Positions 6,801 through 21,068 of a stretch of 64,000 nucleotides of DNA are shown here, one piece after another. The DNA is from Podarcis erhardii (Eukaryota). Location of the stretch: assembly GCA_964252035.1 (NCBI GenBank), contig OZ176216.1; one strand, written 5' to 3'. Position numbers and translations under genes: made by a program. The notes beneath the pieces were generated by a model, which saw only the letters and a list, made by a program, of their open reading frames with translations, did not search any database and was not told the origin of the DNA. How positions within the stretch are numbered: position 1 is the first letter of the stretch; each line of letters opens with the position of its first letter.

Positions 6801-8598
6801 ATCTTGGAGGGCGTCCGTTGCAACTCAGAATGGTAAGCATATGGAATGGGGCAGGTTATTAGGGCTGTGTCTGGATAGCTTGCACTGTTTTAGATCCCTT
6901 TTTCTGAAAGAATATTTGCACTGCTTTATTGAATTTTTTAAAAATAATAGATAATATAATACTAAATTTTATTTATATCCCGCCCTCCCTGGCCAGAGCC
7001 GGGCTCAGGGCGGCTAACATCAGTAAAATTACAGTAAAAACATAATGTGTGTGGGGGGATCAATTTAAAACACAGGTTAAAATGCAGTTTAAAATGCAGC
7101 CTCATTTTAAAAGTAGCCCATAGATCAAAACCATAAAGGGAGGGAAACATATATACGCATTTTGTGTTTGACTTAGTTGGAAGACACACACAAACACAAC
7201 ACATATTTACTGTATATTATATGTATCAGCTGGCATTAAAAACAATAATAATTCCCTGAGAGTTATCAGTTCATTTTAACAGATTTCCTCTCTCTTGCGT
7301 TTATTTTGCATAGCCTCGTTGTACGCCACTTAAAAACTACGGGTGTTAAGCAGCATAAAAATGCCTGGAATAAATAAATAAATACCATATGGTTTTTAAA
7401 AATTACTTGCAAGAGGGCTCTTCAGGACGTCTGAAGCAATAGAGAATAAATTAAACCCAGCTAACATAAGACCTAATAATTTAAATGGGTCTACTCTGAG
7501 TATGAGGTGGTGGTGGTGGAAGAACCCTTAAAACGAATCGGGGTATGTTGTTTTCCTGAGAATGTTTGTCCTACTCAGAGTAGACCTACTAATATGAACG
7601 GACACAACTCATTTAGGCTCCACACTTGAGTTAAGCCTTAGGCGGCTACAGTCCTTTTAGTAGATGACTTAACAGATTTTAAATATTAAGCACTTAAGAA
7701 ATGCTATTAAATAACTCTGGCTGTGTGTGGGGGAGTGGTGAGCAGTGAAATATTTCTGCATTGCAGGGGGGTGGAGTAGATGACCCTCAGGAGACCCTTC
7801 AAATTCTATATATAGAGAGAGAGAGAATTTTTGTGCACTTGTATCGGCCCTCATGCACAAGCCTTTCTTCCTTGTGTTCCAAGGGGGCTGCATGTGGGTC
7901 TCCCCTTCCCCCACCCTATATTCTCTCTACAACAACTGCACCAGGCAGGCCAGGCTGGGTCAGTTTTAGAGCTGAGAGGGGTCTGAACCCATGGGTCTCT
8001 TAACCCAACTGCAGTCCAATACTCTAACCACTATACCACACTGTGCAGCACTAAAAAAAGGCTGTGAGAACCTGCCGCAGATGGGTGTCTTGCCCAGTAC
8101 GGCATGCATTGGAAGTTTTAAAACAGTTGTTAGGTGGTCACCTGTCGGGGATTCTTGAGCTGTCTTTGGAGTGGGTTGGACTAGATGACCCTTGGGGTCC
8201 CTCCAAATTCTACGAAAATACACCAGCCTTCTCCTGCAACATGGTGCCCTCCAGATCCTACAAATCCCATCCTCCTTGACCGTGCTCTATTCTGGCTGGA
8301 GATGATGGAAATTGTAGTACAAAACTAAGTTTGGAGACAGCTGATACACACATTAAAAAGAAGAAAGTAAGTCCTGTTTTACCTCCTGGTGTGAGAATGA
8401 GAGAGTTGCACTGGTGAGTCTAGCATTGTGTGAATGATTAAAGTTTGGCAGAGTCCACATGTCAGTTTTGTAGCGGGGGAGCGGGTTCGAATTCCCAGTG
8501 TGAGTTTCCCACACCTAAAATTCCATTCCTTCTCCTTCCAGCTCCCCACTCGCCAAAGTCTGCTGCGGAGTGAAACCGACCCATTGAGGTTCCAGGCT

Positions 8599-8655
8599 GG
8601 ATATCATCATATACTGTAAGTTGGAATGAGACACTACAGTATAGATGATGTACTA
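8599..8655 (+). ncRNA. MIR144: pre-miR-144 (5p 8599-8620, 3p 8635-8654)
   Basis: GGATATCATCATATACTGTAAG and TACAGTATAGATGATGTACT match the known mature miR-144-5p and -3p; the arms pair and the lower stem extends to about 8586/8666. Confidence 0.98.
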
Positions 8656-8910
8656 CCTTGAACCCCTGGAGCCGCCGAGATCCCAAAGCAACCCTTTCGT
8701 TGTCCTCAGCGCTCCCCACCGGAGCTGAGGTTGGGCTGAGCCCAGCTTGGTTGGGGTGGTTGGATAGAAACTGATTATTTTAAAAGCGCAGAGCCCAGCT
8801 TTATTTTTAAGGCCTTTCCACCGGTGGTCTTCACCCCACCAGAATGACTGTGAAATATGGGACCTTCTCTGTCTCCCCCGCCATTAAATCTAGATATTTC
8901 AGAGCAGAGC

Positions 8911-9185
8911 AGTTCACCTATGGAACTCCTTCCCACAGGAGGAAGAGATGGCTACCAGCTTGGATGGCTTTAAAAGAATAGACAAATTCACAGATGGCTA
9001 TTAATGGCTACTAGCTGCAATGGCTGTACTCTGCCTCCATAGCTGGAGACAGTGAGGCTTCTGAATACCGGTTGTTGGAAACCACAATCCTATAATAGGA
9101 TCCGTTTGGCCCCTGTGAGTACAGGATGCTGAGCTAGATGGGCCATTGGCCTGATCCAGCAGAGCTCTTCTGACCTTCTTCTACG
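8911..9185 (+). mobile_element. CR1 LINE 3' fragment between miR-144 and miR-451
   Basis: GGAACTCCTTCCCACAGGAGG...TTGGATGGCTTTAAAAGA...GGATGCTGAGCTAGATGGGCCATTGGCCTGATCCAGCAG; similar copies at about 13800-14090 and 20450-20770. Confidence 0.75.
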
Positions 9186-9552
9186 TCCCTCCAGATGTTG
9201 CTAGACTTAGCCCCCTTCTGCCCTGATCCTTGCAACATCTGGAGGACAACAGGGTCCCTATCCGACAGTAATGGGGGGAAAGGCACCCTTCTTTAGTCTT
9301 CCATTGGACCACAGGAAATATATCTAAGAAGCTGACTTATTGGCAGCTCGGACTGCGTGTCTTTTCTAGTCCAAGATTTTTCACTTGCCTTAGCAACAGT
9401 TCTTCAGAAACAAGATTTTCCCATCGTCCTTTTTGGGAAAAAGCTAGAACCAGCTTAGAGTTTGTTTTGCTGGGTGTGCGGGTGTGCAACATTGACTGGA
9501 CAAGAAGAAAATGCAATCCTGCTCAGAAGACAAATCTTGCGGGGTGTCAGCA

Positions 9553-9594
9553 AAACCGTTACCATTACTGAGTTTAGTAATGGTAAGGGTTCTT
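9553..9594 (+). ncRNA. MIR451: pre-miR-451 (Dicer-independent, Ago2-sliced short hairpin; mature 9553-9574)
   Basis: AAACCGTTACCATTACTGAGTT is an exact match to mature miR-451; short stem with a 4-6 nt loop, lower stem to 9539/9606, and CNNC (CATC) at 9611-9614. Confidence 0.98.
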
Positions 9595-9712
9595 CTGCCA
9601 TCTTGCCCACCATCTGACTCCACAGAAGCAGGAATTTCAGCTTCATCTGATGAAAGGGGGCTCCTTTTCACGTCGGCCTATATCAGGCCACTTCTTTCTT
9701 GTTCCTGTAAGA

Positions 9713-9718
9713 AATAAA
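9713..9718 (+). terminator. Poly(A) signal of the miRNA host transcript
   Basis: AATAAA 120 nt after pre-miR-451, followed by GCTTTTGCGTTTCCCTTTTATTTG. Confidence 0.55.
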
Positions 9719-10592
9719 AAAAGTTCTAGAAGCTTTTGCGTTTCCCTTTTATTTGCAGAGGGAGGGGTTCCCAAGGATGGCCAACTGGAGCACACGTCCG
9801 GGCATAAAGCCTTTGGTATTTATTTTTATTTATTTATAAAACATTTGCATACTGTGTCATATAAAATATATAAAAGAGGTTGACCGCAATAAAAACATAC
9901 AAAAAAAGTAAAAAGCAGACATCAATCAAGCACAGTGGAAGGATGCATTCTTAATTGCCTGTGTAAGCCTGGCAGAATGGGAAAGTTTTCAGCAGACATT
10001 TTAAAGTTGAAACAAAAGGCGCCTGCTGAATCTCTAGTGGCAGTGAGTTCCATCAGACTGGGTCGATGACACCAAAGGCTCAGTTTCTCATTGCTGTCGG
10101 GGGAGGGCTACTGGGAATGCTGTGCCCCAAAATTCTGAAGCCAGCACTGCAGGAAGAGGGAAAATTAGAACACAATCCTTGAAAGTTTCAAATTGTGCCA
10201 CAGGTTTCTCAAAAGCACATCTGAGCTCTGTTGAGGGAAGAAATTGCAGAAGCTTGCCCTCCATATAATCTTAGAATTGTAGAGTTGGAAGGGAACTCCA
10301 AAGGTCATCCAGTCCAACCCCCTGCTGCCATGCAGGAATCTCAACTAAAGCATCCCTGACAGATGGCCATCCAACCTCTGCTTAAAAACCTCCCAGGAAG
10401 GAGAGTCCCCAACACCGTTCCGCTGTCAAACAGCTCTTACTGTCCACTCCCCATCTAAGTCCACAACCCCCTGGGAACACTGGGTGGGCTTTAGGGTGGT
10501 TTGTGAAAGGTGGGGTGAGGCCCAAAAGGGCCCCCTCCCTGTGAATGGAGCATGTGTCCTAGAATGTTAATGCTCAGAACACTGAAACTTAC

Positions 10593-11026: not shown

Positions 11027-11152
11027 AGGTAAAGGTACCCCTGACCATTAGGTCCAGTCGCGGACGACTCTGGGGTTGTGGCGCTCATCTTGCTCTATAG
11101 GCCGAGGGAGCCAGCGTTTGTCCGCAGACAGCTTCCAGGTCATGTGGCCAGC
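11027..11152 (-). mobile_element. Sauria SINE 3' half only
   Basis: AGGTAAAGGTACCCCTGACCATTAGGTCCAGTCG...GTCATGTGGCCAGC, truncated at the junction with BovB. Confidence 0.85.
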
Positions 11153-11679
11153 CTGCTTCTTGGGAGGAAAGCAATGACAAACCTAGACAGCATCTTAAAA
11201 AGCAGAGACATCACCTTGCCAACAAAGGTTTGTATAGTTAAAACTATGGTTTTCCCAGTAGTGATGTATGGAAGTGAGAGCTGGACCATAAAGAAGGGTG
11301 ATCGCCTAAGAATTGATGCTTTTGAATTCTGGTGCTGGAGGAGACTCTTGAGAGTCCCATGGACTGCAAGAAGATCAAACCTATCCATTCTTAAGGAAAT
11401 CAGCCCTGAGAGCTCACTGGAAGGACGGATCCTGAAGCTGAGGCTCCAAGACTTTGGCCACCTCATGAGAAGAGAAGACTCCCTGGAAAAGACCCTGATG
11501 TTGGGAAAGATGGAGGGCACAAGGAGAAGGGGACGACAGAGGACGAGATGGTGGAACAGTGTTCTCGAAGCTACCGGCATGAGTTTGACCAAACTGCGGG
11601 AGGCAATGGAAGACAGGAGTGCCTGGCGTGCTCTGGTCCAGGGGTCACCAAGAGTCGGACACGACTAAACAACAACAAA
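11153..11679 (+). mobile_element. RTE-BovB LINE 3' end (RT C-terminus, 5'-truncated)
   Basis: LLLGRKAMTNLDSILKSRDITLPTKV...VFPVVMYGSESWTIKK...IDAFEFWCWRRLLRVPWTARRSN...LEKTLMLGK is BovB ORF; tail GAGTCGGACACGACTAAAC(AAC)n. Confidence 0.95.
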
Positions 11680-12229: not shown

Positions 12230-12453
12230 TCCCTGCGCTGTTCATCGTGGGAAATGGATTGCACGGATTCAAGTGTGATCACGTGACTGAAAACGGCCGC
12301 CCTGTGACTGCGGAAAAACGGGTATGCAATGGAGACGCTTTCGGAAGTGACATCACTTCCTATTTCCGGTGGTGACTCTTCCTGTTTCCGCCGGGCGAAC
12401 TGGAACGAGGGGGGCAGAGAGTTAAGCTCACCCCTCAGGGTGTACTAAGTTGT

Positions 12454-12528
<75 letters not shown>

Positions 12529-12730
12529 GCAGTTGCTCCAGGCTCTTCCTCCGACTTCTGTCATCGAAGCCGCTCTCGCCACCGCCACCCTTGCTCTCTA
12601 TGGCTCCCCTCTTCCGCCCCCTCCAGCCAATCAGTTTGCACGGCTGCTTTCTTCCCCCTCTCTCCCAAGATGGCGCCGCCCGTCCGCCGAGGCGTTTCTT
12701 GAGCTTCGACGGCGGCGCCGGTGGTTGCCA
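12230..12730 (+). promoter_or_regulatory. ERAL1 CpG-island promoter
   Basis: CpG-rich; TCACGTGAC E-box 12279-12287, ETS sites 12342-12390, GC box 12615-12621, CCAAT 12627-12631, YY1-like CAAGATGGCG 12666-12675. Confidence 0.75.
12456..12527. repeat. (AAT)24 microsatellite inside the ERAL1 promoter
   Basis: 72 bp perfect repeat. Confidence 0.97.
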
Positions 12731-15700
12731 TGGCGGCGGCGGTGGCGGCGGCGTGCCTGGCCCGGCGTGGCTGGCGGGCTTTGGGCCTGGCCGGACTTGG
12801 GGCCTCGGCGGGAGGAGGGAGGCCGTCGTCGCGCTGCGCCTGCTCAGGTGGCGTTGGGCTTGGTTAATCTTTGGAACTCGCCGCCGCATGTTGTGAGGTT
12901 GTCTCACTGGCGGGAAGCTGGATTAATCTGTAGATAGATCAGCCGAGTAGAAGGCCCAAAGCTAACGCCTTTTTAGTTTTAGGGAAAGGCCACTGGTCTT
13001 TAATATTGTTTTTAATGCTGTACGCCGACCTGGGAGCTTAGGCTGAAGAGTGGGCAATTCATTCATTCGTTAATTATATCTTAAGTGCTGGCACGACACC
13101 TGCTTTGCATGCAGAAGGCTCCAGGTTCAATGCCAAGTAGCATCTCCAGCTAGCAGCTATAACATTGGAGAGTTGCTGCCAGCCAAAGTAAACAATACTG
13201 AGTTTATTGACCCTACTCAGTATAAGGAAGCTGCCCGTTTTCTCCTGTTGTTCTGCATGAAAATCATTTGCCTTAGCTCCCTTCTTCCTGCCAATAGTGC
13301 CTCTGTGCTTCCTGGCCTTTAATAGCCCTACTTCCTGGAATTTCTTTGTACAGTGGTACCTTGGTTTAAGAAAAGTCCTGTTTACAAACTATTCGGTTTA
13401 CGAACTCCGCAAAACTGGAAGTAGTGTCCTGGTTTGTGAACTTTACCAGTTTGCAAACAGAATCCGAACGGTGGAAGGGCACTGGCAGTGGGAGGCCTCG
13501 TCAGGGAAAGCGCGCCTCGGTTTAATAATGATTTCAGTTTAAGAACAGACTTCCGGAATGGATTATAAACCGAGGTACCACTCTATTCTTTAGCCTACCT
13601 GCAAAAGTGTTTCCATTTCTAGAACCTGCTTTCACCAGAGGAAAGTGTACTCCTCCTTCCCCTTCTTTCTCGGCAGATTGACTGCAAACACTCTTTGGTT
13701 CCTGAGAATTTTCCTGCCTCTCTCATTAACACTAAAACATGTGGGCATCCATTGAAGCTGAATGCTTGAAGATTCAGGAGAGTGAAAAGGAAATCCTTCT
13801 TCATGTAGTGCATAGTCAAACTGGAAAACTCACTTCCATAGATGGCAGTGATGGCTGACAACCTAGATGGCTTTTAAAAAGTAGACAAATGCATTACAAT
13901 TAGCCATGATAGCTATGCTTTGCCCACCACAGCTGGAGGCAGGAATATGCCTGAAGACCAGTTGCTGGAAACTCCAGGAGGGGGCTCTTGTACTCAAATC
14001 CTGCTTGAAGGTTTCCCATTGGGGCATCTGGTCGGCCACTGTGAGAACAAAATGCTGGACTAGTTGGCCCCAATCCAGCAAGCTCATCTTATCTTCTTAT
14101 GAGTAGCTGTAATGTTTGCCAGCATTCTGTGCCGTCACACCCATAGATCAGCTCATATCAGAGCAAGTTCAACCCCCACAAATGCCTGACATTCTGGGTT
14201 CTTGGTCCTGAGGTTTCCCCACCACATCCTTGATCTGCAAGAGGAGTATTTCTAAAATGCGGGTTTTCTCTCTTGTTATTTGCTTTAGGTATCAGCCTCC
14301 ATTTCTTGAAGGACCCATTCCATCAGGGCAGGATTGTCCCAGCTCGCTTGTATGGAAACGACTCTGCCCTGGATTACATCCTTGGGATTACTAAAGAAGA
14401 TGCCCCATCTTTGGTTGGTCAGCACCCACCGCCTTTGAGCGCCTTTAAAGGTGAACCTTGACTTCTGTCAGTTATGTTTGGGTAGCAGGCCGAAATTGAT
14501 TTCCTTTGGTAGAAGCTGATTGGAATTCCTTTGGTAGAAGCTGATTGGAATTATCGTAGGGACGCGGGTGGCGCTGTGGGTTAAACCACTGAGCCTAGTG
14601 CTTGCCGATCAGAAGATTGGCGGTTCGAATCCCCGCAACGGGGTGAGCTCCCGTTGCTCAGTCCCAGTTCCTGCCAACCTAGAAGTTTGAAAGCACATCA
14701 ATGTGCAAGTAGATAAATAGACACCACTCCGGCGGGAAGGTAAATGGCATTTCAATGCACTGCTCTGGTTCTCCAGAAGCGGCTTAGTCATGCTGGCCAC
14801 GTGACCTGGAAGCTGTACGCCGGCTCCCTCGGCCAATAAAGTGAGATGAGCGCCGCAACCCCAGAGTCGGTCACGACTGGACCTAATAGTCAGGGGTTCC
14901 TTTACCTTTACCTTTAATCATCATATTATTATTAGTTGCCAACCCTTCACCCTCAGGTCCCAGGGAGGGCTACAACATTAAAACACAATATTAAAAACAG
15001 TTTAAAACAACTTGCAATCACAAAATTAGCCTAGTTCTGGATGTGGAAGCCTTTAGTTTAATCTATTGGGACTCGCAAAGCACTGAGGTCCCATAGAGAT
15101 TGTTCATGTGAAACCACTGGAAATAGCAAGTGATGTCTGGGCGTTCTTTCTGCAGCTGAGCAAGACATTTTGCTGGGGCACCAGCCGGATCAGCCTGAGA
15201 ATCCCAAGATCTTGAGAATCGCCATCATTGGGGCTCCAAATGCTGGGAAATCGACCCTGTCGAACCAGCTCTTGGGACGGAAGGTAATGAGCTGGAGCAC
15301 ACAGCCTCCATGGGTGTGGGAGGATTGGGGCTGCCCTCCAGCACTCCCTTGCATTATACAACCCCTTGGCTTCTCTCCTTGACAGGTCCTGCCTGTCTCC
15401 AAGAAGGTGCACACGACCAGGCGCAATGCCCAGGGCGTCATCACAAAGGACGATACTCAGCTGGTTGGTATTAAGAATTGGCCCAAGCACTCTCCAACAC
15501 CCCAGGCACACCTTGTGAAACTCACATGCCAAGGTTTGGTGCTGTTTGCCCACAGCAACTGGCATTTGGTGGTGTGATACTCCAAAACATGGAGACTCCA
15601 TGTTCAGCTAACACGGTTGACGGCAGAGCTACCATTCATTAATTGAGGAGTATTCTGTTCTACTCCCTTATAGCAGGAATTCCTCTCTCTTTTTTTTCTT

Positions 15701-18700
15701 CAGTGAAGTTCTCAATGAGCAAATTCATTTCTTCAGCCAAGTGTTTTCTTAAACCTTTTAAGTGATTTGATTCTCTGTTTCTTTGCCTAGGTTGTCTTGG
15801 ACACTCCAGGCCTCACCACACACCTCAAAGCCAAAAGGTATAGAAGTAACTGGAGCCTGGGAGAGAAGCAGTTCTTTTGGGGCTGGGAAGTACTGAATTC
15901 ACGCTGTGTGTTTCTTTCAACTTTTCTTTCAGGCATCAGTTGGAAAAAACTCTGCTTTACGACCCCTGTAAGAGCTTGAAGAATGCAGACCTAGGTAGAG
16001 AATAGGTTTCCTTTTCTTACCTTGACCTCTCTCTCCCATCATGCCACCCCTGGACCACTTAGTGGTCGCCATCCTTTGCTGCTGCAGTGATTTATGTGGT
16101 GATGGTGGGAAGGATGAACCAGTGTCCCAGTGTGGTGCAGGGCTTAGAGTGTTGGACTAGGACCTGGGAGACCAGGGTCCAAATCTCCACTTGGCCATGA
16201 CTCACTTGGCGACTCCAGGCCAGTCACTATATTTCAGCCTGTCCTACCTCAGAAGGCTGTGGGGATATAAATGGGGGTGGGGGGTGGACATTGCTTTATA
16301 TCCCTTTTTTTCTCCATGGATACAACATTAAAACATTAAGATGCAGCCTCTTCACAGGAGGAGAAAGCAAAAAAGAAAGAGGGAGAGGGAATCAAACTGA
16401 TTCTAAGCCAAAGGCCAGGCAGAACAACTCTGTCTTACAGGCCCTGCGGAAAGAAATCAGATGCCTCAGGGCCCTGGTCTCATGAGACAGAGCGTTCCAC
16501 CAGCCTGGAGCCAGTGTTGAAAAGGTCCTGGCTCTGGTTGAAGCTAATCTAACTTCCTTTGGGCCCAGGACGTCTAGGGTGTTGCTATTTATGGACCGTA
16601 AGGTCCTCCGTGGGGCATGCCAGGAGAGGCGGTCCTGTAGGTCCTCCCCCTCCTCATTTAATCTCCACAACAACCTTGTGGGGTAAATTATGCTGAGAGT
16701 GAGCGACTGACCCAAGGTCACTCAGTAGGCTTTGTGGTCAAGTGGGGATTCGAACCCTGTTCTTCCAGGTCGTAGTCCAACACTCTAACCACACTCTGGG
16801 CTGCCAGCGCTAGAGGCTTTTTTCCTCCTTGGACCAGCTGATGTTACCGTTAAGGATCGTTTTGCTTTAAGATGGGCTGGTGGCTGTCTGCTGCTTGGGA
16901 GTGAAAGGTTGACCCAGGCTGACCTTGTGACCCCCACTTCCTTCTTTGAAGTGCTAGTTCTCGTGGATGTTTCAGACCATTATACCCGGAACCGCCTCCA
17001 CCCAGAGGTGCTCCAGTGTCTGGCTCGGTTCCCTGATCTTCCCAGCATCCTTGTCTTGAACAAGGTGAGTGTGCCCAATTTCCTTATCCCAAAAGGGATG
17101 GGCTGCAGGGCTAGAGAATGTAATATAGCAACAATTTCCATTTATTGCCAAAAGGTTCTTTTTTTTTGTTCCGTGGTGCAGAAACCACAGCAGAACCAAA
17201 AACGGCTGCAGAAAACAATCAAGGGTGCTTGCAGTTTGTTAAAATTTGCACCCTTGGCTAAAATTGCCCTCATCTCTTATCAAATGCTTTAGCTGATAGA
17301 TCTCCTCTCTAATCTATGCAGCTCTAATCTTAATCTCGTCTTCCTCTCTCATTCATATATATGATTGCTACTTAGACTTGCATCTTTATTTTCACTGCTA
17401 TTTTTTACCATGCCTATGGCATCCTGCGGCCTCGATGCCACTCATCTCCAGTTCTGCTTTACCCCTGGAGCTGCTGATGCCATCTTCCCTAGATGCCACT
17501 AATATTGAGATTTCTTTCAATGTTTTTCAGGCAACAATGCAAGCCACAAATTCTGGCGAAGGGATAAAGTTCAGTTGAGCCAAGGGGCTAGGGACCAAGC
17601 CCCTCAACCACCTCAGCTGAGAGAACTGGCCATTCCAGCTGGCACATAATACTCATTCCACAATTGTAATATAGTGTGGCAACACCTACACTTTGGAACT
17701 CCCCGCCTATTGACATCAGGCAGGCACTTTCGCTACACATTTTTCAGCACCTGCTAAAAACGTCGTTTAGACAAGCCTGGCCAGATGTTTAGGAAGTCAA
17801 AAGGTGTTTTAATCTGCCTTTAGTCTATTGTTGCTTTAGCTTTATCTTTTCGCAAACTGCTTTGAGGGTTTTCCTCCCCGCAATCAAGTGGTGCATAAAT
17901 TTAGGAAATAAATAAGTAAATACATTCCTGCAACTCCTGATTCCCTTCCATTTCTTCTGTTTCAGGTGGACCTTCTGAAGAAGAAATTTCTCCTGCTGTA
18001 CCTGGTGACGGAGCTGACCGAGGGGGTCGTCAATGGAAAGAAGCTGAAAGTCAAGTCCAGAGTCAAGCCAGACTCCCTTACGGAGGTCACCCAGGTGTCA
18101 GCGACCTCTGAACACCTGTCCCCAGAGACCAGGCATCTGGAGGCAGATCAAGGGCCTCAGCCTGGCTCCGTTTTGGATGGTGAAGCCAGTGAGGCTGCAG
18201 AAGACTCATTTCTTGCAAAGGAGAAGAGGAAACATGTGAGGGAGAAAGCCAGGAAGGGCTGGCCCGGCTTCCAGGAGATCTTTATGCTGGCTGCTACGGA
18301 GAGAGAGGAAGTGGAGACTCTGAAGGTAAATCGCAGGGCTGTTGCTTGGGGTCATGCTTGGAGTACCTGCTTTGCCATGTGGTGGGTCCTAGGTTTCAGT
18401 CCCCAATAGCATGTCCAGGTAGGACTTGGCGGGAGGGAAGACTTCTGCCTGGCAACAATTTCCTTTGGGGGGATGGGGGGGACAGGACAGAGGGAAGGCT
18501 GGCCCCGCCTTGCATTTTATCGAAATAATGCTTTTGTTTGTTTTATGCGTAAATAATATTTGTATGCTGCTGTGTCGTAAAAAATATATCAAAGCGGTTT
18601 ACAGAATTAGAAGGTTAAAAACAGACATCAATCCACCATTGCGGAAGGATGTCTTCGTATTTGCCTTCTTAGACCTGGCAGAATAGAAATGTTTTCAGCA

Positions 18701-19907
18701 GGCGTTTAAAAGTCAGCACAGAAAGGGCGCCTGCTGAATCTCTAGTGGCAGAGAGTTCCACAAGACTGGGCCGATCACAACGAAGCCTCAGTTTCTTGTT
18801 GTCAGATGAGCCTTCCCATAAAAGGAACGGCCAGTGGCGCTCCTGCAGGTGATCGCACTTGACTGAGCAGCGATAGAAGGGTTCAGGCAGGGCCTGAGGC
18901 ACTCTGGACCCAAGTTGTTCCAGGTCTGTTATAGAACAGGAGGCTGGGTTGGTGTGCCATTGGTCTGAAGCTGGGAGGCCAGGGTTCGAATCCCCTACTC
19001 AGTCACAAAGCTCTCTGGCTGACCTGGGGCCAGTCTCTCTCTCTTTCTCCACCATGCCTACCTCACAGGGTTGTTGTGGGGGTAGGATCATGAAGGGGAG
19101 CACCACATCCACCACCTTGAGCTCTTTGCACAAAAGAAGGTGTGATGTAAATGGGGTATAGAAAATAAAATAAAATCAAAATGCCAAACACCCTCTGCCC
19201 CCCAGAGGCAGTGATGCAAGAATCATGGGACTGTAGAGTTGGGAGGGACCTGCAGAGGACATCTAGTCCAACCCTCCTGGCCTGACCCTGGCTCTTGTTT
19301 CCAACAGAGGTACCTTTTGAAGCAGGCCAGGCCAGGCCCCTGGGAGTTCCACAGCGAGGTCCTGACCACCCAGACCCCGCAGGAGGTCTGTGATAACATC
19401 ATCCGAGAGAAGCTTCTCGAGTATCTGCCTGAGGAAGTGCCCTACATGGTGACCCAGGTGAGGTGGGGAGGGCCAGGAGGTGATGGGTTGGGATCCTATC
19501 CCCTTCTTCCCTTCCTTACACATCCTAGCATGTGCGCTCCCCTCCACTGTAGACCTGAGGGCTCCTTCTCTTTTCCTTGCAGAGGACGGAGGTCTGGGAA
19601 GAGGGGCCTGGCGGGGAGCTGGTCATCGTGCAGAATTTGATAGTCCAGAAGGAGACGCACGTGGTGAGTACCTGGTCAGAAGGTGTCTCTCTCCTCCCGC
19701 CACCAGCCAAGAGAAACATTTCTGCCAAGCTGTCAGTTTGGCATTGAGGGTGGCTATTTTTTCCCCTAAACCTCCAGCCCAAAGCAGTAATGGTAGTGGC
19801 CATGAAGAGAGGGACCGTCTCCACCATAGGCATTTAAAGCAGCTTCATGCCACTTCAGATAGTTGTGGCTTCCCCCAAAGAATCATGGGAACTTAATAAT
19901 AATAATA

Positions 19908-19940
<33 letters not shown>

Positions 19941-21068
19941 TATTTATACCCCACCCCTCTGGCTGGGTTTCCCCAGCCACTCTGGGCTGCTCCCAACAGA
20001 ATATTATTATTATTATTATTATTATTTAAGCGATAAAACATCAAACATTAAAAACTTCCCTAAACAGGGCTGCCTTCAGATGCCTTATAAAAGTGAGATA
20101 GTTGTTTATTTCCTTGACTTCCTATGGTAGGGTGTTACACAGGGAGGGTGCCACTATCGAGAAGGCCCTCTGTCTGGTTCCCTGTAACCTCACTTCTCGC
20201 AGGAAGGGAACTGCCAGAAGGCCCTCGGAGCTGGACCTCAGTGTCTGGGCTGAACGATGGGGGTGGAGACGCTCCTTCGGGTCTACGGGGCCGAGGCTGT
20301 TTCAAGGAACTGTATTTTGATAAGCCTGCTGAGAATCTTTAGGCTGCTCCCCTAGTCCCTCCCACCTCACAGAACTACAATTCTCAGAGCAGTTTAACAA
20401 ACAATGAGTGTTGGAAAATTCAGGACACATAAAAGGGGAAGACCTTCTTTATGCAACCCATACTTAGACTGTGGAACTCTCTCCCACAGGAGGCAGTGAT
20501 GGCCACCAACCTGGGTGGTTTGAAAGAGGGTTAGACAAATCCATGGAGGAGGAGAGGGCTATTGATGGCTACTAGCCAGGATGGCGGTTGGAGGCAGCAA
20601 CGTCCAATGCTCTCTGAATGCTGATTTCTGGAAACACCCTGGGGAGGAGAGGGCTCTTGGTTCAAATCTTGCTCGGGGAGTTCTCATGGAGACACTTCGT
20701 TGGCCCCTATGACCAAAGGATGCTGGACAAGATGGGCCATTGGCTTGTTCCAGCAGGCTGTTGTTATGTTCTAATATAAGCCTTCTTCCCAATGAACTTT
20801 CTGTAGTTGCAGATAAGCTTCTCAGCTGGGGAATGGGGTAGGGTGAGCAAAAAAGGATGCCTAGGCTGTGATGCCACAAATGATAAGCTGTCTCGATTCC
20901 CACTGACACTCCTTTCTTCTTGGCCTTCGCCTTCCCCTGGAGCAGAAGATGCTCATTGGCTCCCGCGGCCACCTGATCAGCAAGATCGCCCAGGAGGCCG
21001 GCTCTGACCTGATGAACGCTTTCCTCTGCGATGTGCACCTGAAGCTTTCTGTGCAGCTGAAGAAATGA
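12730..21068 (+). CDS. ERAL1: Era-like 12S mitochondrial rRNA chaperone 1 (GTPase + KH domain); join(12730-12847,14289-14450,15156-15283,15386-15463,15791-15837,15933-15994,16952-17064,17966-18325,19308-19457,19583-19663,20946-21068), 1422 nt, 473 aa
   Basis: G1 GAPNAGKS, G2 VHTTR, G3 DTPG, G4 NKVD, G5 MLAA, and KH-region EEVPY...WEEGPGGEL...LIGSRG; all introns GT-AG with consistent phases; Ala/Arg-rich mitochondrial presequence after a GCCATGG start. The exon 1 donor (CAG|GTGGCG) is the least certain junction. Confidence 0.95.
13351..13583. mobile_element. Tigger-like MITE (related subfamily) in ERAL1 intron 1
   Basis: TA-CAGTGGTACCTTGGTTTA ... TAAACCGAGGTACCACTC-TA. Confidence 0.8.
14559..14915 (+). 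mobile_element. Full-length Sauria SINE in ERAL1 intron 2
   Basis: tRNA-derived head GGGACGCGGGTGGCGCTGTGGG...GGTTCGAATCCC, BovB-like 3' part GAGTCGGTCACGACTGG, (ACCTTT)n tail, and a degenerate roughly 10-bp TSD (AATTATCGTA/AATCATCATA). Confidence 0.93.
16126..16280 (+). mobile_element. tRNA-derived MIR-like squamate SINE (one of about 10 copies; others near 2600-2720 -, 7930-8045 -, 16650-16790 -, 18940-19090 +, 22855-23010 +, 35560-35790 +, 49850-50050 -, 53830-54260 -, 56460-56600 +)
   Basis: Shared CCAGTGTGG..TAG...AGAGTGTTGGACTAGGACC...CAGGGTTCAAAT..CCAC..GGCCATG...GGCCAGTCAC...CAGCCT.ACCTACCTC core with A- and B-box-like motifs. Confidence 0.7.
16320..16625 (-). mobile_element. L2-clade LINE 3' fragment
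   Basis: Minus-strand PRRTLRS...[41 protein letters not shown] is an L2 C-terminus. Confidence 0.75.
19950..20290 (-). mobile_element. L2 3' end with (TTA)n tails in ERAL1 intron 10
   Basis: Reverse complement of the L2 tail seen at 2400-2600. Confidence 0.75.

What the first reader, a model, noticed from the sequence alone, without database searches (positions are those of the whole stretch)
9553..9594. pre-miR-451 in this lizard carries the G6:G35 seed mismatch described as the fish-type, slicing-enhancing state
Seen: numbering from A9553, the stem pairs i+j=41 and position 6 (G9558) faces position 35 (G9587), so the 3' arm reads GGTAAGGGTTCT. Established: Chen, Sive and Bartel (2017) showed that a G-G mismatch here enhances Ago2 cleavage of fish pre-miR-451 and compensates for slicing-impaired teleost Ago2; as I recall, amniotes were represented by G-C and human has G-U. 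Inference: this squamate either retains the ancestral mismatch or has reverted, which may offset weak slicing or weak cluster assistance.
Basis: partly seen in the sequence, partly recalled or inferred. Interest (0 to 1): 0.75.

Follow-up and report, generated by a model that had tools for sequence, protein, structure and literature searches.

The report
Lizard miR-451 hairpin G:G mismatch
This lizard's red-blood-cell microRNA precursor (pre-miR-451) does carry a G opposite G at seed position 6, but that position is already known to vary freely among vertebrates, so the finding is a real and fairly ordinary variant.

Summary
Window 9538-9608 (+) is a bona fide mir-451 hairpin (Rfam 75.1 bits), 0.9 kb downstream of mir-144 and upstream of ERAL1. 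G9558 (position 6) faces G9587 (position 35) in a 1x1 internal loop.

The "fish-type state in an amniote" framing does not hold. ERAL1-anchored loci from nine other sauropsids show position 35 as:
- G in Anolis carolinensis
- U in Podarcis (both tandem copies), Rhineura, Hemicordylus and a gecko
- C in Lacerta agilis, a turtle, a crocodile and an ostrich

Three lacertid genera with otherwise identical hairpins carry G, U and C. Position 35 changes at least four times on this tree, more than any other hairpin position. Parsimony makes U ancestral for squamates, so G here is derived, not retained.

The roughly 900-nt mir-144 to mir-451 spacer occurs with all three states, and Anolis has G with a 166-nt spacer. 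That gives no sign of compensation for weak cluster assistance. Sun et al. 2015 (PMC4345305) already reported position 35 as "almost equally C, U or G" across 18 species. Squamate AGO2 was not examined.

The parts
9538..9608 (+). pri-miR-451 hairpin (Rfam RF00722 match)
   Evidence: 75.1 bits, E 2.6e-15, full model 1-71. MFE -35.3 kcal/mol, z -6.4.
9553..9594 (+). 42-nt pre-miR-451: 17-bp stem, 4-nt loop, A1:C40 open end
   Evidence: Positions 1-34 are identical to the Podarcis, Lacerta, Rhineura, Hemicordylus and Anolis orthologues. The 42-nt fold is -21.3 kcal/mol.
9553..9574 (+). mature miR-451 guide (22 nt), unaffected by the variant
   Evidence: Identical in 8 of the 10 sauropsid hairpins; the gecko and the turtle differ at loop position 20.
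9558..9558 (+). G6 of the guide, the seed base that faces position 35
9587..9587 (+). G35, the variable base. It makes a G:G mismatch here, where relatives have a G:U wobble or a G:C pair. It lies in the 3' arm that is discarded after slicing.
   Evidence: T in Podarcis, C in Lacerta, G in Anolis. It is one of 10 three-state columns among 2178 aligned lacertid columns.
8589..8665 (+). mir-144 hairpin, the upstream cluster partner
   Evidence: RF00682, 83.2 bits; 919 nt from the mir-144-3p start to the miR-451 start.
14303..21062 (+). ERAL1 coding exons downstream on the same strand, used as the synteny anchor for orthologous loci. The first exon is probably further upstream.
   Evidence: tblastn of bird and bichir ERAL1 against the window. 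MMR_HSR1 GTPase motif in the exon at 15170-15286.

Best explanation
This is the orthologous mir-144/mir-451 erythroid microRNA cluster of a lacertid lizard. The G at 9587 is a lineage-specific substitution, most parsimoniously U to G. It sits at the one stem position of pre-miR-451 that tolerates C, U or G across vertebrates.

Inferred from the established miR-451 pathway, not shown here: the 42-nt hairpin is cut out by Drosha and is too short for Dicer. It is loaded into Ago2, which slices the 3' arm opposite guide positions 10-11, and the product is trimmed to about 22 nt. Position 35 lies in the discarded 3' fragment, so the mature miRNA and its targets are unchanged. The only possible effect is on biogenesis. 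The 42-nt hairpin is 1.4 kcal/mol less stable than the G:U form and 3.2 kcal/mol less stable than the G:C form. Weaker pairing at seed positions 6-7 may modestly speed slicing or fragment release.

The substitution is most likely neutral or nearly neutral fine-tuning, not a compensatory adaptation.
For: Identity and anatomy.

Orthology: the mir-144/451 cluster lies upstream of ERAL1 on the same strand in 9 other sauropsids.

Position 35 states:
- G: the window and Anolis
- U: Podarcis (both copies), Rhineura, Hemicordylus, Heteronotia
- C: Lacerta, Emydura, Crocodylus, Struthio

Fitch parsimony gives 4 changes at position 35, the most of any hairpin position, with the squamate and lacertoid roots at U.

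In three lacertids the 72-nt hairpin region is otherwise identical, apart from one flank base in Lacerta, while position 35 shows all three states. It is one of 10 three-state columns among 2178.

The C state forms a CpG with G36, which would raise C-to-T turnover (seen directly in the sequence).

Spacer length does not track the state.

Literature:
- PMC4345305 reports p35 as almost equally C, U or G in 18 species.
- aca-mir-451 is among the top 20 miRNAs in Anolis muscle. Given the Anolis genome sequence, a G:G hairpin is evidently productive in a lizard.
- PMC11100590 finds that the G:G benefit at position 6 is context-dependent, and absent when position 7 is already a weak A:U pair. miR-451 has U7:A34.
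Against: Two changes at one site among three lacertids with only 6-10% neutral divergence is faster than a typical neutral site (0.46% of columns are three-state). Selection, a mutational hot spot or sorting of old paralogues therefore cannot be excluded.

A was never seen at position 35 in these 10 species, nor in the 18 species described in PMC4345305, so the site is not fully free.

The base call at 9587 was not checked against reads.

No expression or processing data exist for this species.

Chen et al. 2017 could not be read, so what it says about tetrapods is unknown to me.
Confidence: 0.72

Rival explanations
1. Adaptive compensation. G:G was selected in this lineage because it accelerates Ago2 slicing, offsetting slicing-impaired lizard AGO2 or poor Drosha cluster assistance across the 0.9-kb mir-144 to mir-451 spacer.
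For: A G:G mismatch at guide position 6 enhances slicing in some contexts (PMC11100590 citing Chen et al. 2017). The site changes faster than typical neutral sites in lacertids. G:G arose at least twice in squamates, in Anolis and in this lineage.
Against: The same roughly 900-nt spacer occurs with U (Podarcis, Rhineura) and with C (Lacerta), and Anolis has G with a 166-nt spacer. Sun et al. found the natural G:G form the least potent of the three in human-cell reporters. The position-6 effect vanishes when position 7 is a weak A:U pair, and miR-451 has U7:A34. No AGO2 data were obtained.
Confidence: 0.12
2. Retention of an ancestral vertebrate G:G state that other amniotes lost.
For: Fish have G:G (a carp sequence). 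Anolis also has it.
Against: The successive outgroups to this lizard have U or C: Podarcis U, Lacerta C, Rhineura U, Hemicordylus U and a gecko U. Retention would need at least 4 losses within squamates, against 3 changes if U is ancestral. The turtle, crocodile and ostrich are all C.
Confidence: 0.05
3. Artefact or private variant. G9587 is an assembly or consensus error, or one allele of a heterozygous site in the sequenced individual.
For: No read-level check was possible. The difference from the nearest relative is a single base.
Against: Logan contigs of three runs of the same organism hold 0.90-0.99 of the sampled 31-mers of 8500-9900, although these may be the source data. Modern assemblies rarely miscall a base in non-repetitive sequence. 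The same state exists in Anolis, so it is biologically plausible.
Confidence: 0.08
4. Hidden paralogy. An old tandem duplication of the cluster carried different position-35 variants, and lineages kept different copies, which gives a false impression of rapid change.
For: Podarcis muralis has two tandem mir-144/451 copies 5.9 kb apart.
Against: The two Podarcis copies differ by only 1.1%, against 6.4% between Podarcis and the window. Both carry U, and both align to the single window copy. The window, Lacerta, Rhineura and Anolis each show one copy within about 10 kb of ERAL1.
Confidence: 0.03

Closest known systems
Rfam RF00722 mir-451 (vertebrate Dicer-independent, Ago2-sliced microRNA precursor)
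   Same: Full-length match above the gathering score. Identical mature sequence, 17-bp stem, 4-nt AGUU loop and A1:C40 open end, linked to mir-144.
   Different: Nothing structural. The Rfam consensus itself leaves position 6 and position 35 (a lower-case c) as an unpaired column, so the family model already allows variation here.
Zebrafish/teleost pre-miR-451 (G6:G35 form; Chen, Sive and Bartel 2017; Sun et al. 2015, PMC4345305)
   Same: The same G:G mismatch at p6:p35.
   Different: In teleosts the mismatch coexists with slicing-impaired Ago2. That is the premise given in the title of Chen et al. 2017; the paper is not held. Here the AGO2 state is unknown, and the G arose secondarily from a U or C background.
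Anolis carolinensis mir-451 (aca-mir-451)
   Same: The 42-nt hairpin is identical to the window's, including G35 (L010 4269). It is a squamate, and the miRNA is abundantly expressed.
   Different: The mir-144 to mir-451 spacer is 166 nt against 919 nt, the flanks differ, and the G probably arose independently.
Podarcis muralis and Lacerta agilis mir-451 (other lacertids)
   Same: The hairpin plus 15 nt of flank on each side is identical, apart from one flank base in Lacerta. The spacer is about 950 nt and the position upstream of ERAL1 is the same.
   Different: Position 35 is U in both Podarcis copies and C in Lacerta. Podarcis has a tandem duplicate of the cluster.

Membership tests
mir-451 (Rfam RF00722) | Covariance-model score at or above the curated gathering score over the full model | tested here: met
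   75.1 bits against 66.5, model positions 1-71 of 71.
mir-451 (Rfam RF00722) | Conserved mature guide at the 5' end of a short hairpin (about 17-bp stem, 4-nt loop) too short for Dicer | tested here: met
   the 22-nt guide is identical in 8 of the 10 sauropsids (the gecko and turtle differ at loop position 20). The fold gives a 17-position stem with one 1x1 loop, and a 4-nt loop.
mir-451 (Rfam RF00722) | Genomic linkage downstream of mir-144 on the same strand | tested here: met
   mir-144 at 8589-8665 (+); 919 nt apart, with the same order in 9 other sauropsids.
mir-451 (Rfam RF00722) | Dicer-independent, Ago2-catalysed maturation and erythroid expression | not testable with these tools
This is inferred from family membership only.
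Naturally mismatched (G6:G35) pre-miR-451 class, as in zebrafish | G at position 35 opposite G6 | tested here: met
   at assembly level only.
Naturally mismatched (G6:G35) pre-miR-451 class, as in zebrafish | Coexistence with slicing-impaired Ago2 that the mismatch compensates | not tested
   AGO2 is not in the window.
Naturally mismatched (G6:G35) pre-miR-451 class, as in zebrafish | State inherited from the fish-like ancestor (homology of the mismatch) | tested here: not met
   parsimony puts U at the squamate and lacertoid roots. The G here is derived and convergent.

The most novel reading that the evidence does not exclude
Position 35 of pre-miR-451 is a selected tuning knob. Squamates, and lacertids in particular, switch repeatedly among G:C, G:U and G:G to set the Ago2 slicing rate or 3'-fragment release, and so the miR-451 output. 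This would explain why the site changes faster than flanking neutral DNA while A is never used.
Probability: 0.12. Interest if true: 0.55.

Novelty: new member of a known kind. Interest (0 to 1): 0.25.

Why it matters
As flagged, a fish-type mismatch in an amniote would have suggested an unknown weakness in lizard slicing or cluster processing. The comparison removes most of that. G:G is one of three natural states, it is already present in the model lizard Anolis, and it is not tied to spacer length.

A small but clean evolutionary observation remains. In three lacertid genera the whole hairpin is frozen except position 35, which shows all three permitted bases. This supports the published idea that p6:p35 pairing strength is deliberately flexible. 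It also offers natural isogenic hairpins (G, U or C in an otherwise identical lacertid context) for slicing assays.

Tried and rejected
I did not fetch same-species contigs over that place by another tool. Orthologous hairpins were located only inside local scripts, with the pattern read from window.fa by coordinates.

2. Papers not held. Chen, Sive and Bartel 2017, Yang et al. 2010 and Yang et al. 2012 could not be read. Their content is cited only through papers that quote them.

3. ERAL1 anchor. A first protein search with a bird ERAL1 returned only birds. MAFFT misplaced four short exon rows, and I dropped them. I made no joined spliced ERAL1 model. Six exon references were kept as separate rows beside a bichir protein (alignment A3), and that profile brought up squamates, turtles, a crocodile and amphibians.

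4. Look-ups that gave nothing. Natator ERAL1 isoform X2 is not on record. Xenopus laevis ERAL1 has no mir-451 within 10 kb. No amphibian or fish locus was therefore obtained.

5. Squamate AGO2 was not examined.

6. The supplementary alignment of PMC4345305 is not held, so I cannot name its six G:G species.

Full report
**Observation**

The stretch 9538-9608 (+) is a full-length match to Rfam mir-451 (75.1 bits, gathering score 66.5). mir-144 lies at 8589-8665 (+) with 83.2 bits. The minimum-free-energy fold is -35.3 kcal/mol (z = -6.4, 0 of 200 shuffles as stable). It pairs positions 2-5 with 39-36 and positions 7-18 with 34-23, leaving G6 and G35 as a 1x1 internal loop.

**Read-level check**

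All later work on orthologous hairpins was done beside that place, through a protein anchor and local scripts. The base call at 9587 therefore remains unverified.

**Surroundings**

tblastn of ERAL1 proteins against the window and a Pfam hit show ERAL1 coding exons at about 14.3-21.1 kb on the + strand. The microRNA cluster therefore lies a few kb upstream of ERAL1 in the same orientation.

**Getting orthologous loci**

1. An ERAL1 exon from the window found full-length ERAL1 representatives.
2. A first word-index search with a bird protein returned only birds.
3. I then aligned six exon references, kept as separate rows with no joined spliced model, beside a bichir ERAL1.
4. That profile retrieved ERAL1 of lacertids, other squamates, turtles, a crocodile and amphibians. 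A third search added Toxicofera.
5. The look-up of encoding contigs with 10-kb flanks gave usable loci for Struthio, Podarcis, Rhineura, Hemicordylus, Heteronotia, Crocodylus, Xenopus, Lacerta, Anolis and Emydura.
6. Natator and bichir failed.

The highest-scoring squamates were lacertids. The window is 6.4% diverged from Podarcis muralis and 9.7% from Lacerta agilis in aligned non-coding sequence. It therefore comes from another lacertid genus.

**Comparative result**

All nine other sauropsids have the mir-144/mir-451 pair upstream of ERAL1 on the same strand. Xenopus laevis has no mir-451 within 10 kb of ERAL1.

| Species | Position 35 | mir-144-3p to miR-451 spacer (nt) |
|---|---|---|
| Window lizard | G | 919 |
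| Anolis carolinensis | G | 166 |
| Podarcis muralis (both tandem copies) | U | 952 |
| Rhineura | U | 908 |
| Hemicordylus | U | 377 |
| Heteronotia (gecko) | U | 398 |
| Lacerta agilis | C | 948 |
| Emydura (turtle) | C | 431 |
| Crocodylus | C | 151 |
| Struthio | C | 628 |

- In the window, Podarcis and Lacerta, the 42-nt hairpin and 15 nt of flank on each side are identical except for position 35, plus one flank base in Lacerta.
- Fitch parsimony on the accepted sauropsid tree gives four changes at position 35, more than at any other hairpin position. Position 42 has 3, loop position 20 has 2 and the others have 1 or fewer. It places U at the squamate and lacertoid roots.
- In a 2.4-kb three-way lacertid alignment, 9587 is one of only 10 three-state columns among 2178. 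In the C state the base forms a CpG with G36, which would favour rapid C-to-T change.
- The 42-nt folds give -21.3 kcal/mol (G:G), -22.7 kcal/mol (G:U) and -24.5 kcal/mol (G:C in Lacerta).

**Cluster-assistance idea**

The spacer column of the table shows that long spacers occur with all three position-35 states, and G occurs with both a long and a short spacer. There is no association. The long spacer is shared by the Lacertoidea sampled here and is not special to this species.

**Literature**

- Sun et al. [quoted passage not shown] They counted six G:G, six G:C and five G:U. Human is G:U, mouse is G:C and zebrafish is G:G. In their reporter assays the G:G form was the least potent.
- Wang et al. 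(PMC11100590), citing Chen, Sive and Bartel 2017, confirm that a G:G mismatch at position 6 can raise the slicing rate (2.4-fold in one guide). They saw no gain when position 7 is already a weak A:U pair. Pre-miR-451 has U7:A34.
- Hutchins et al. 2016 (PMC4858913) list aca-mir-451 among the 20 most abundant miRNAs in Anolis muscle. Together with the Anolis genome sequence, this shows that a G:G hairpin is productive in a lizard.
- Chen et al. 2017 and the two Yang et al. papers are not held.
- The Rfam consensus itself treats position 6 and position 35 as an unpaired column with a weakly conserved c.

**Mechanism**

Shown here:
- identity of the hairpin
- its fold
- its genomic context
- the distribution of states at position 35

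Inferred from the established pathway of the family: Drosha excision, direct loading into Ago2, slicing of the 3' arm opposite guide positions 10-11, and 3' trimming. Position 35 is in the discarded 3' fragment, so the mature guide and its targets are unchanged. The variant can only act on biogenesis, through weaker pairing at seed positions 6-7.

The most likely reading (about 0.7) is a derived, nearly neutral substitution at the one stem position that tolerates C, U or G. The rivals are:
- adaptive compensation (about 0.12)
- an unverified base call or polymorphism (about 0.08)
- ancestral retention (about 0.05)
- paralogue sorting (about 0.03)

**Caveats**

- The rate at this site within lacertids is higher than at typical neutral sites, and A is never seen, so some form of constrained tuning cannot be excluded.
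- Only ten sauropsids were sampled.
- No tuatara, amphibian or fish locus was obtained.
- Squamate AGO2 was not examined.

**Verdict**

This is a real hairpin with a real (assembly-level) G:G mismatch. It is a new instance of an already documented natural variant, and it is derived, not retained. There is no evidence for the proposed compensation. Interest is low to moderate.

Noticed in passing
L002 (Podarcis muralis, GCA_964188315.1 OZ076969.1): mir-144-3p at 465 and 6406, miR-451 at 1417 and 7358: Podarcis muralis carries a tandem duplication (about 5.9 kb period) of the whole mir-144/mir-451 cluster upstream of ERAL1. The copies differ by 1.1%, both have U35, and both align to the single copy in the window. 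The duplication is therefore younger than the split from the window species.
   Followed up: partly
window 8633-9553; L002, L009, L003 compared with L010, L004, L005, L006: The distance from mir-144 to miR-451 is about 900-950 nt in all four Lacertoidea sampled (window, Podarcis, Lacerta, Rhineura). It is 151-431 nt in Anolis, a cordylid, a gecko, a turtle and a crocodile, and 628 nt in ostrich. The spacer expansion is therefore old and shared, not specific to this genome.
   Followed up: partly
L001 7999 (Struthio) and L006 9318 (Crocodylus): Both archosaurs share an A33-to-G change, which turns U8:A33 into a U:G wobble, together with C35. The turtle Emydura (L011 8678) has U32-to-C (an A9:C mismatch), A34-to-G and a loop change. 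Other 3'-arm positions also drift while the guide stays fixed.
   Followed up: no
L007/L008 (Xenopus laevis ERAL1 loci): No mir-144 or mir-451 lies within 10 kb of ERAL1 in Xenopus laevis. The flanking genes are a glycosyltransferase-8 gene and a biopterin-dependent hydroxylase gene. The ERAL1 to mir-451 linkage seen in all sauropsids sampled is absent or wider there.
   Followed up: no
window 12450-12540: A long AAT/ATT-type trinucleotide run (read as poly-N or poly-L in ORFs) lies next to a GC-rich island just upstream of the ERAL1 exons. It is probably the ERAL1 promoter region.
   Followed up: no
window 11078-11668 (+): A 196-aa ORF resembles the C-terminal part of a retroelement reverse transcriptase. 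Similar copies lie elsewhere in the window (about 60.6 kb, 55.1 kb and 48.4 kb) and in Podarcis. It had no Pfam hit at E <= 0.01.
   Followed up: no
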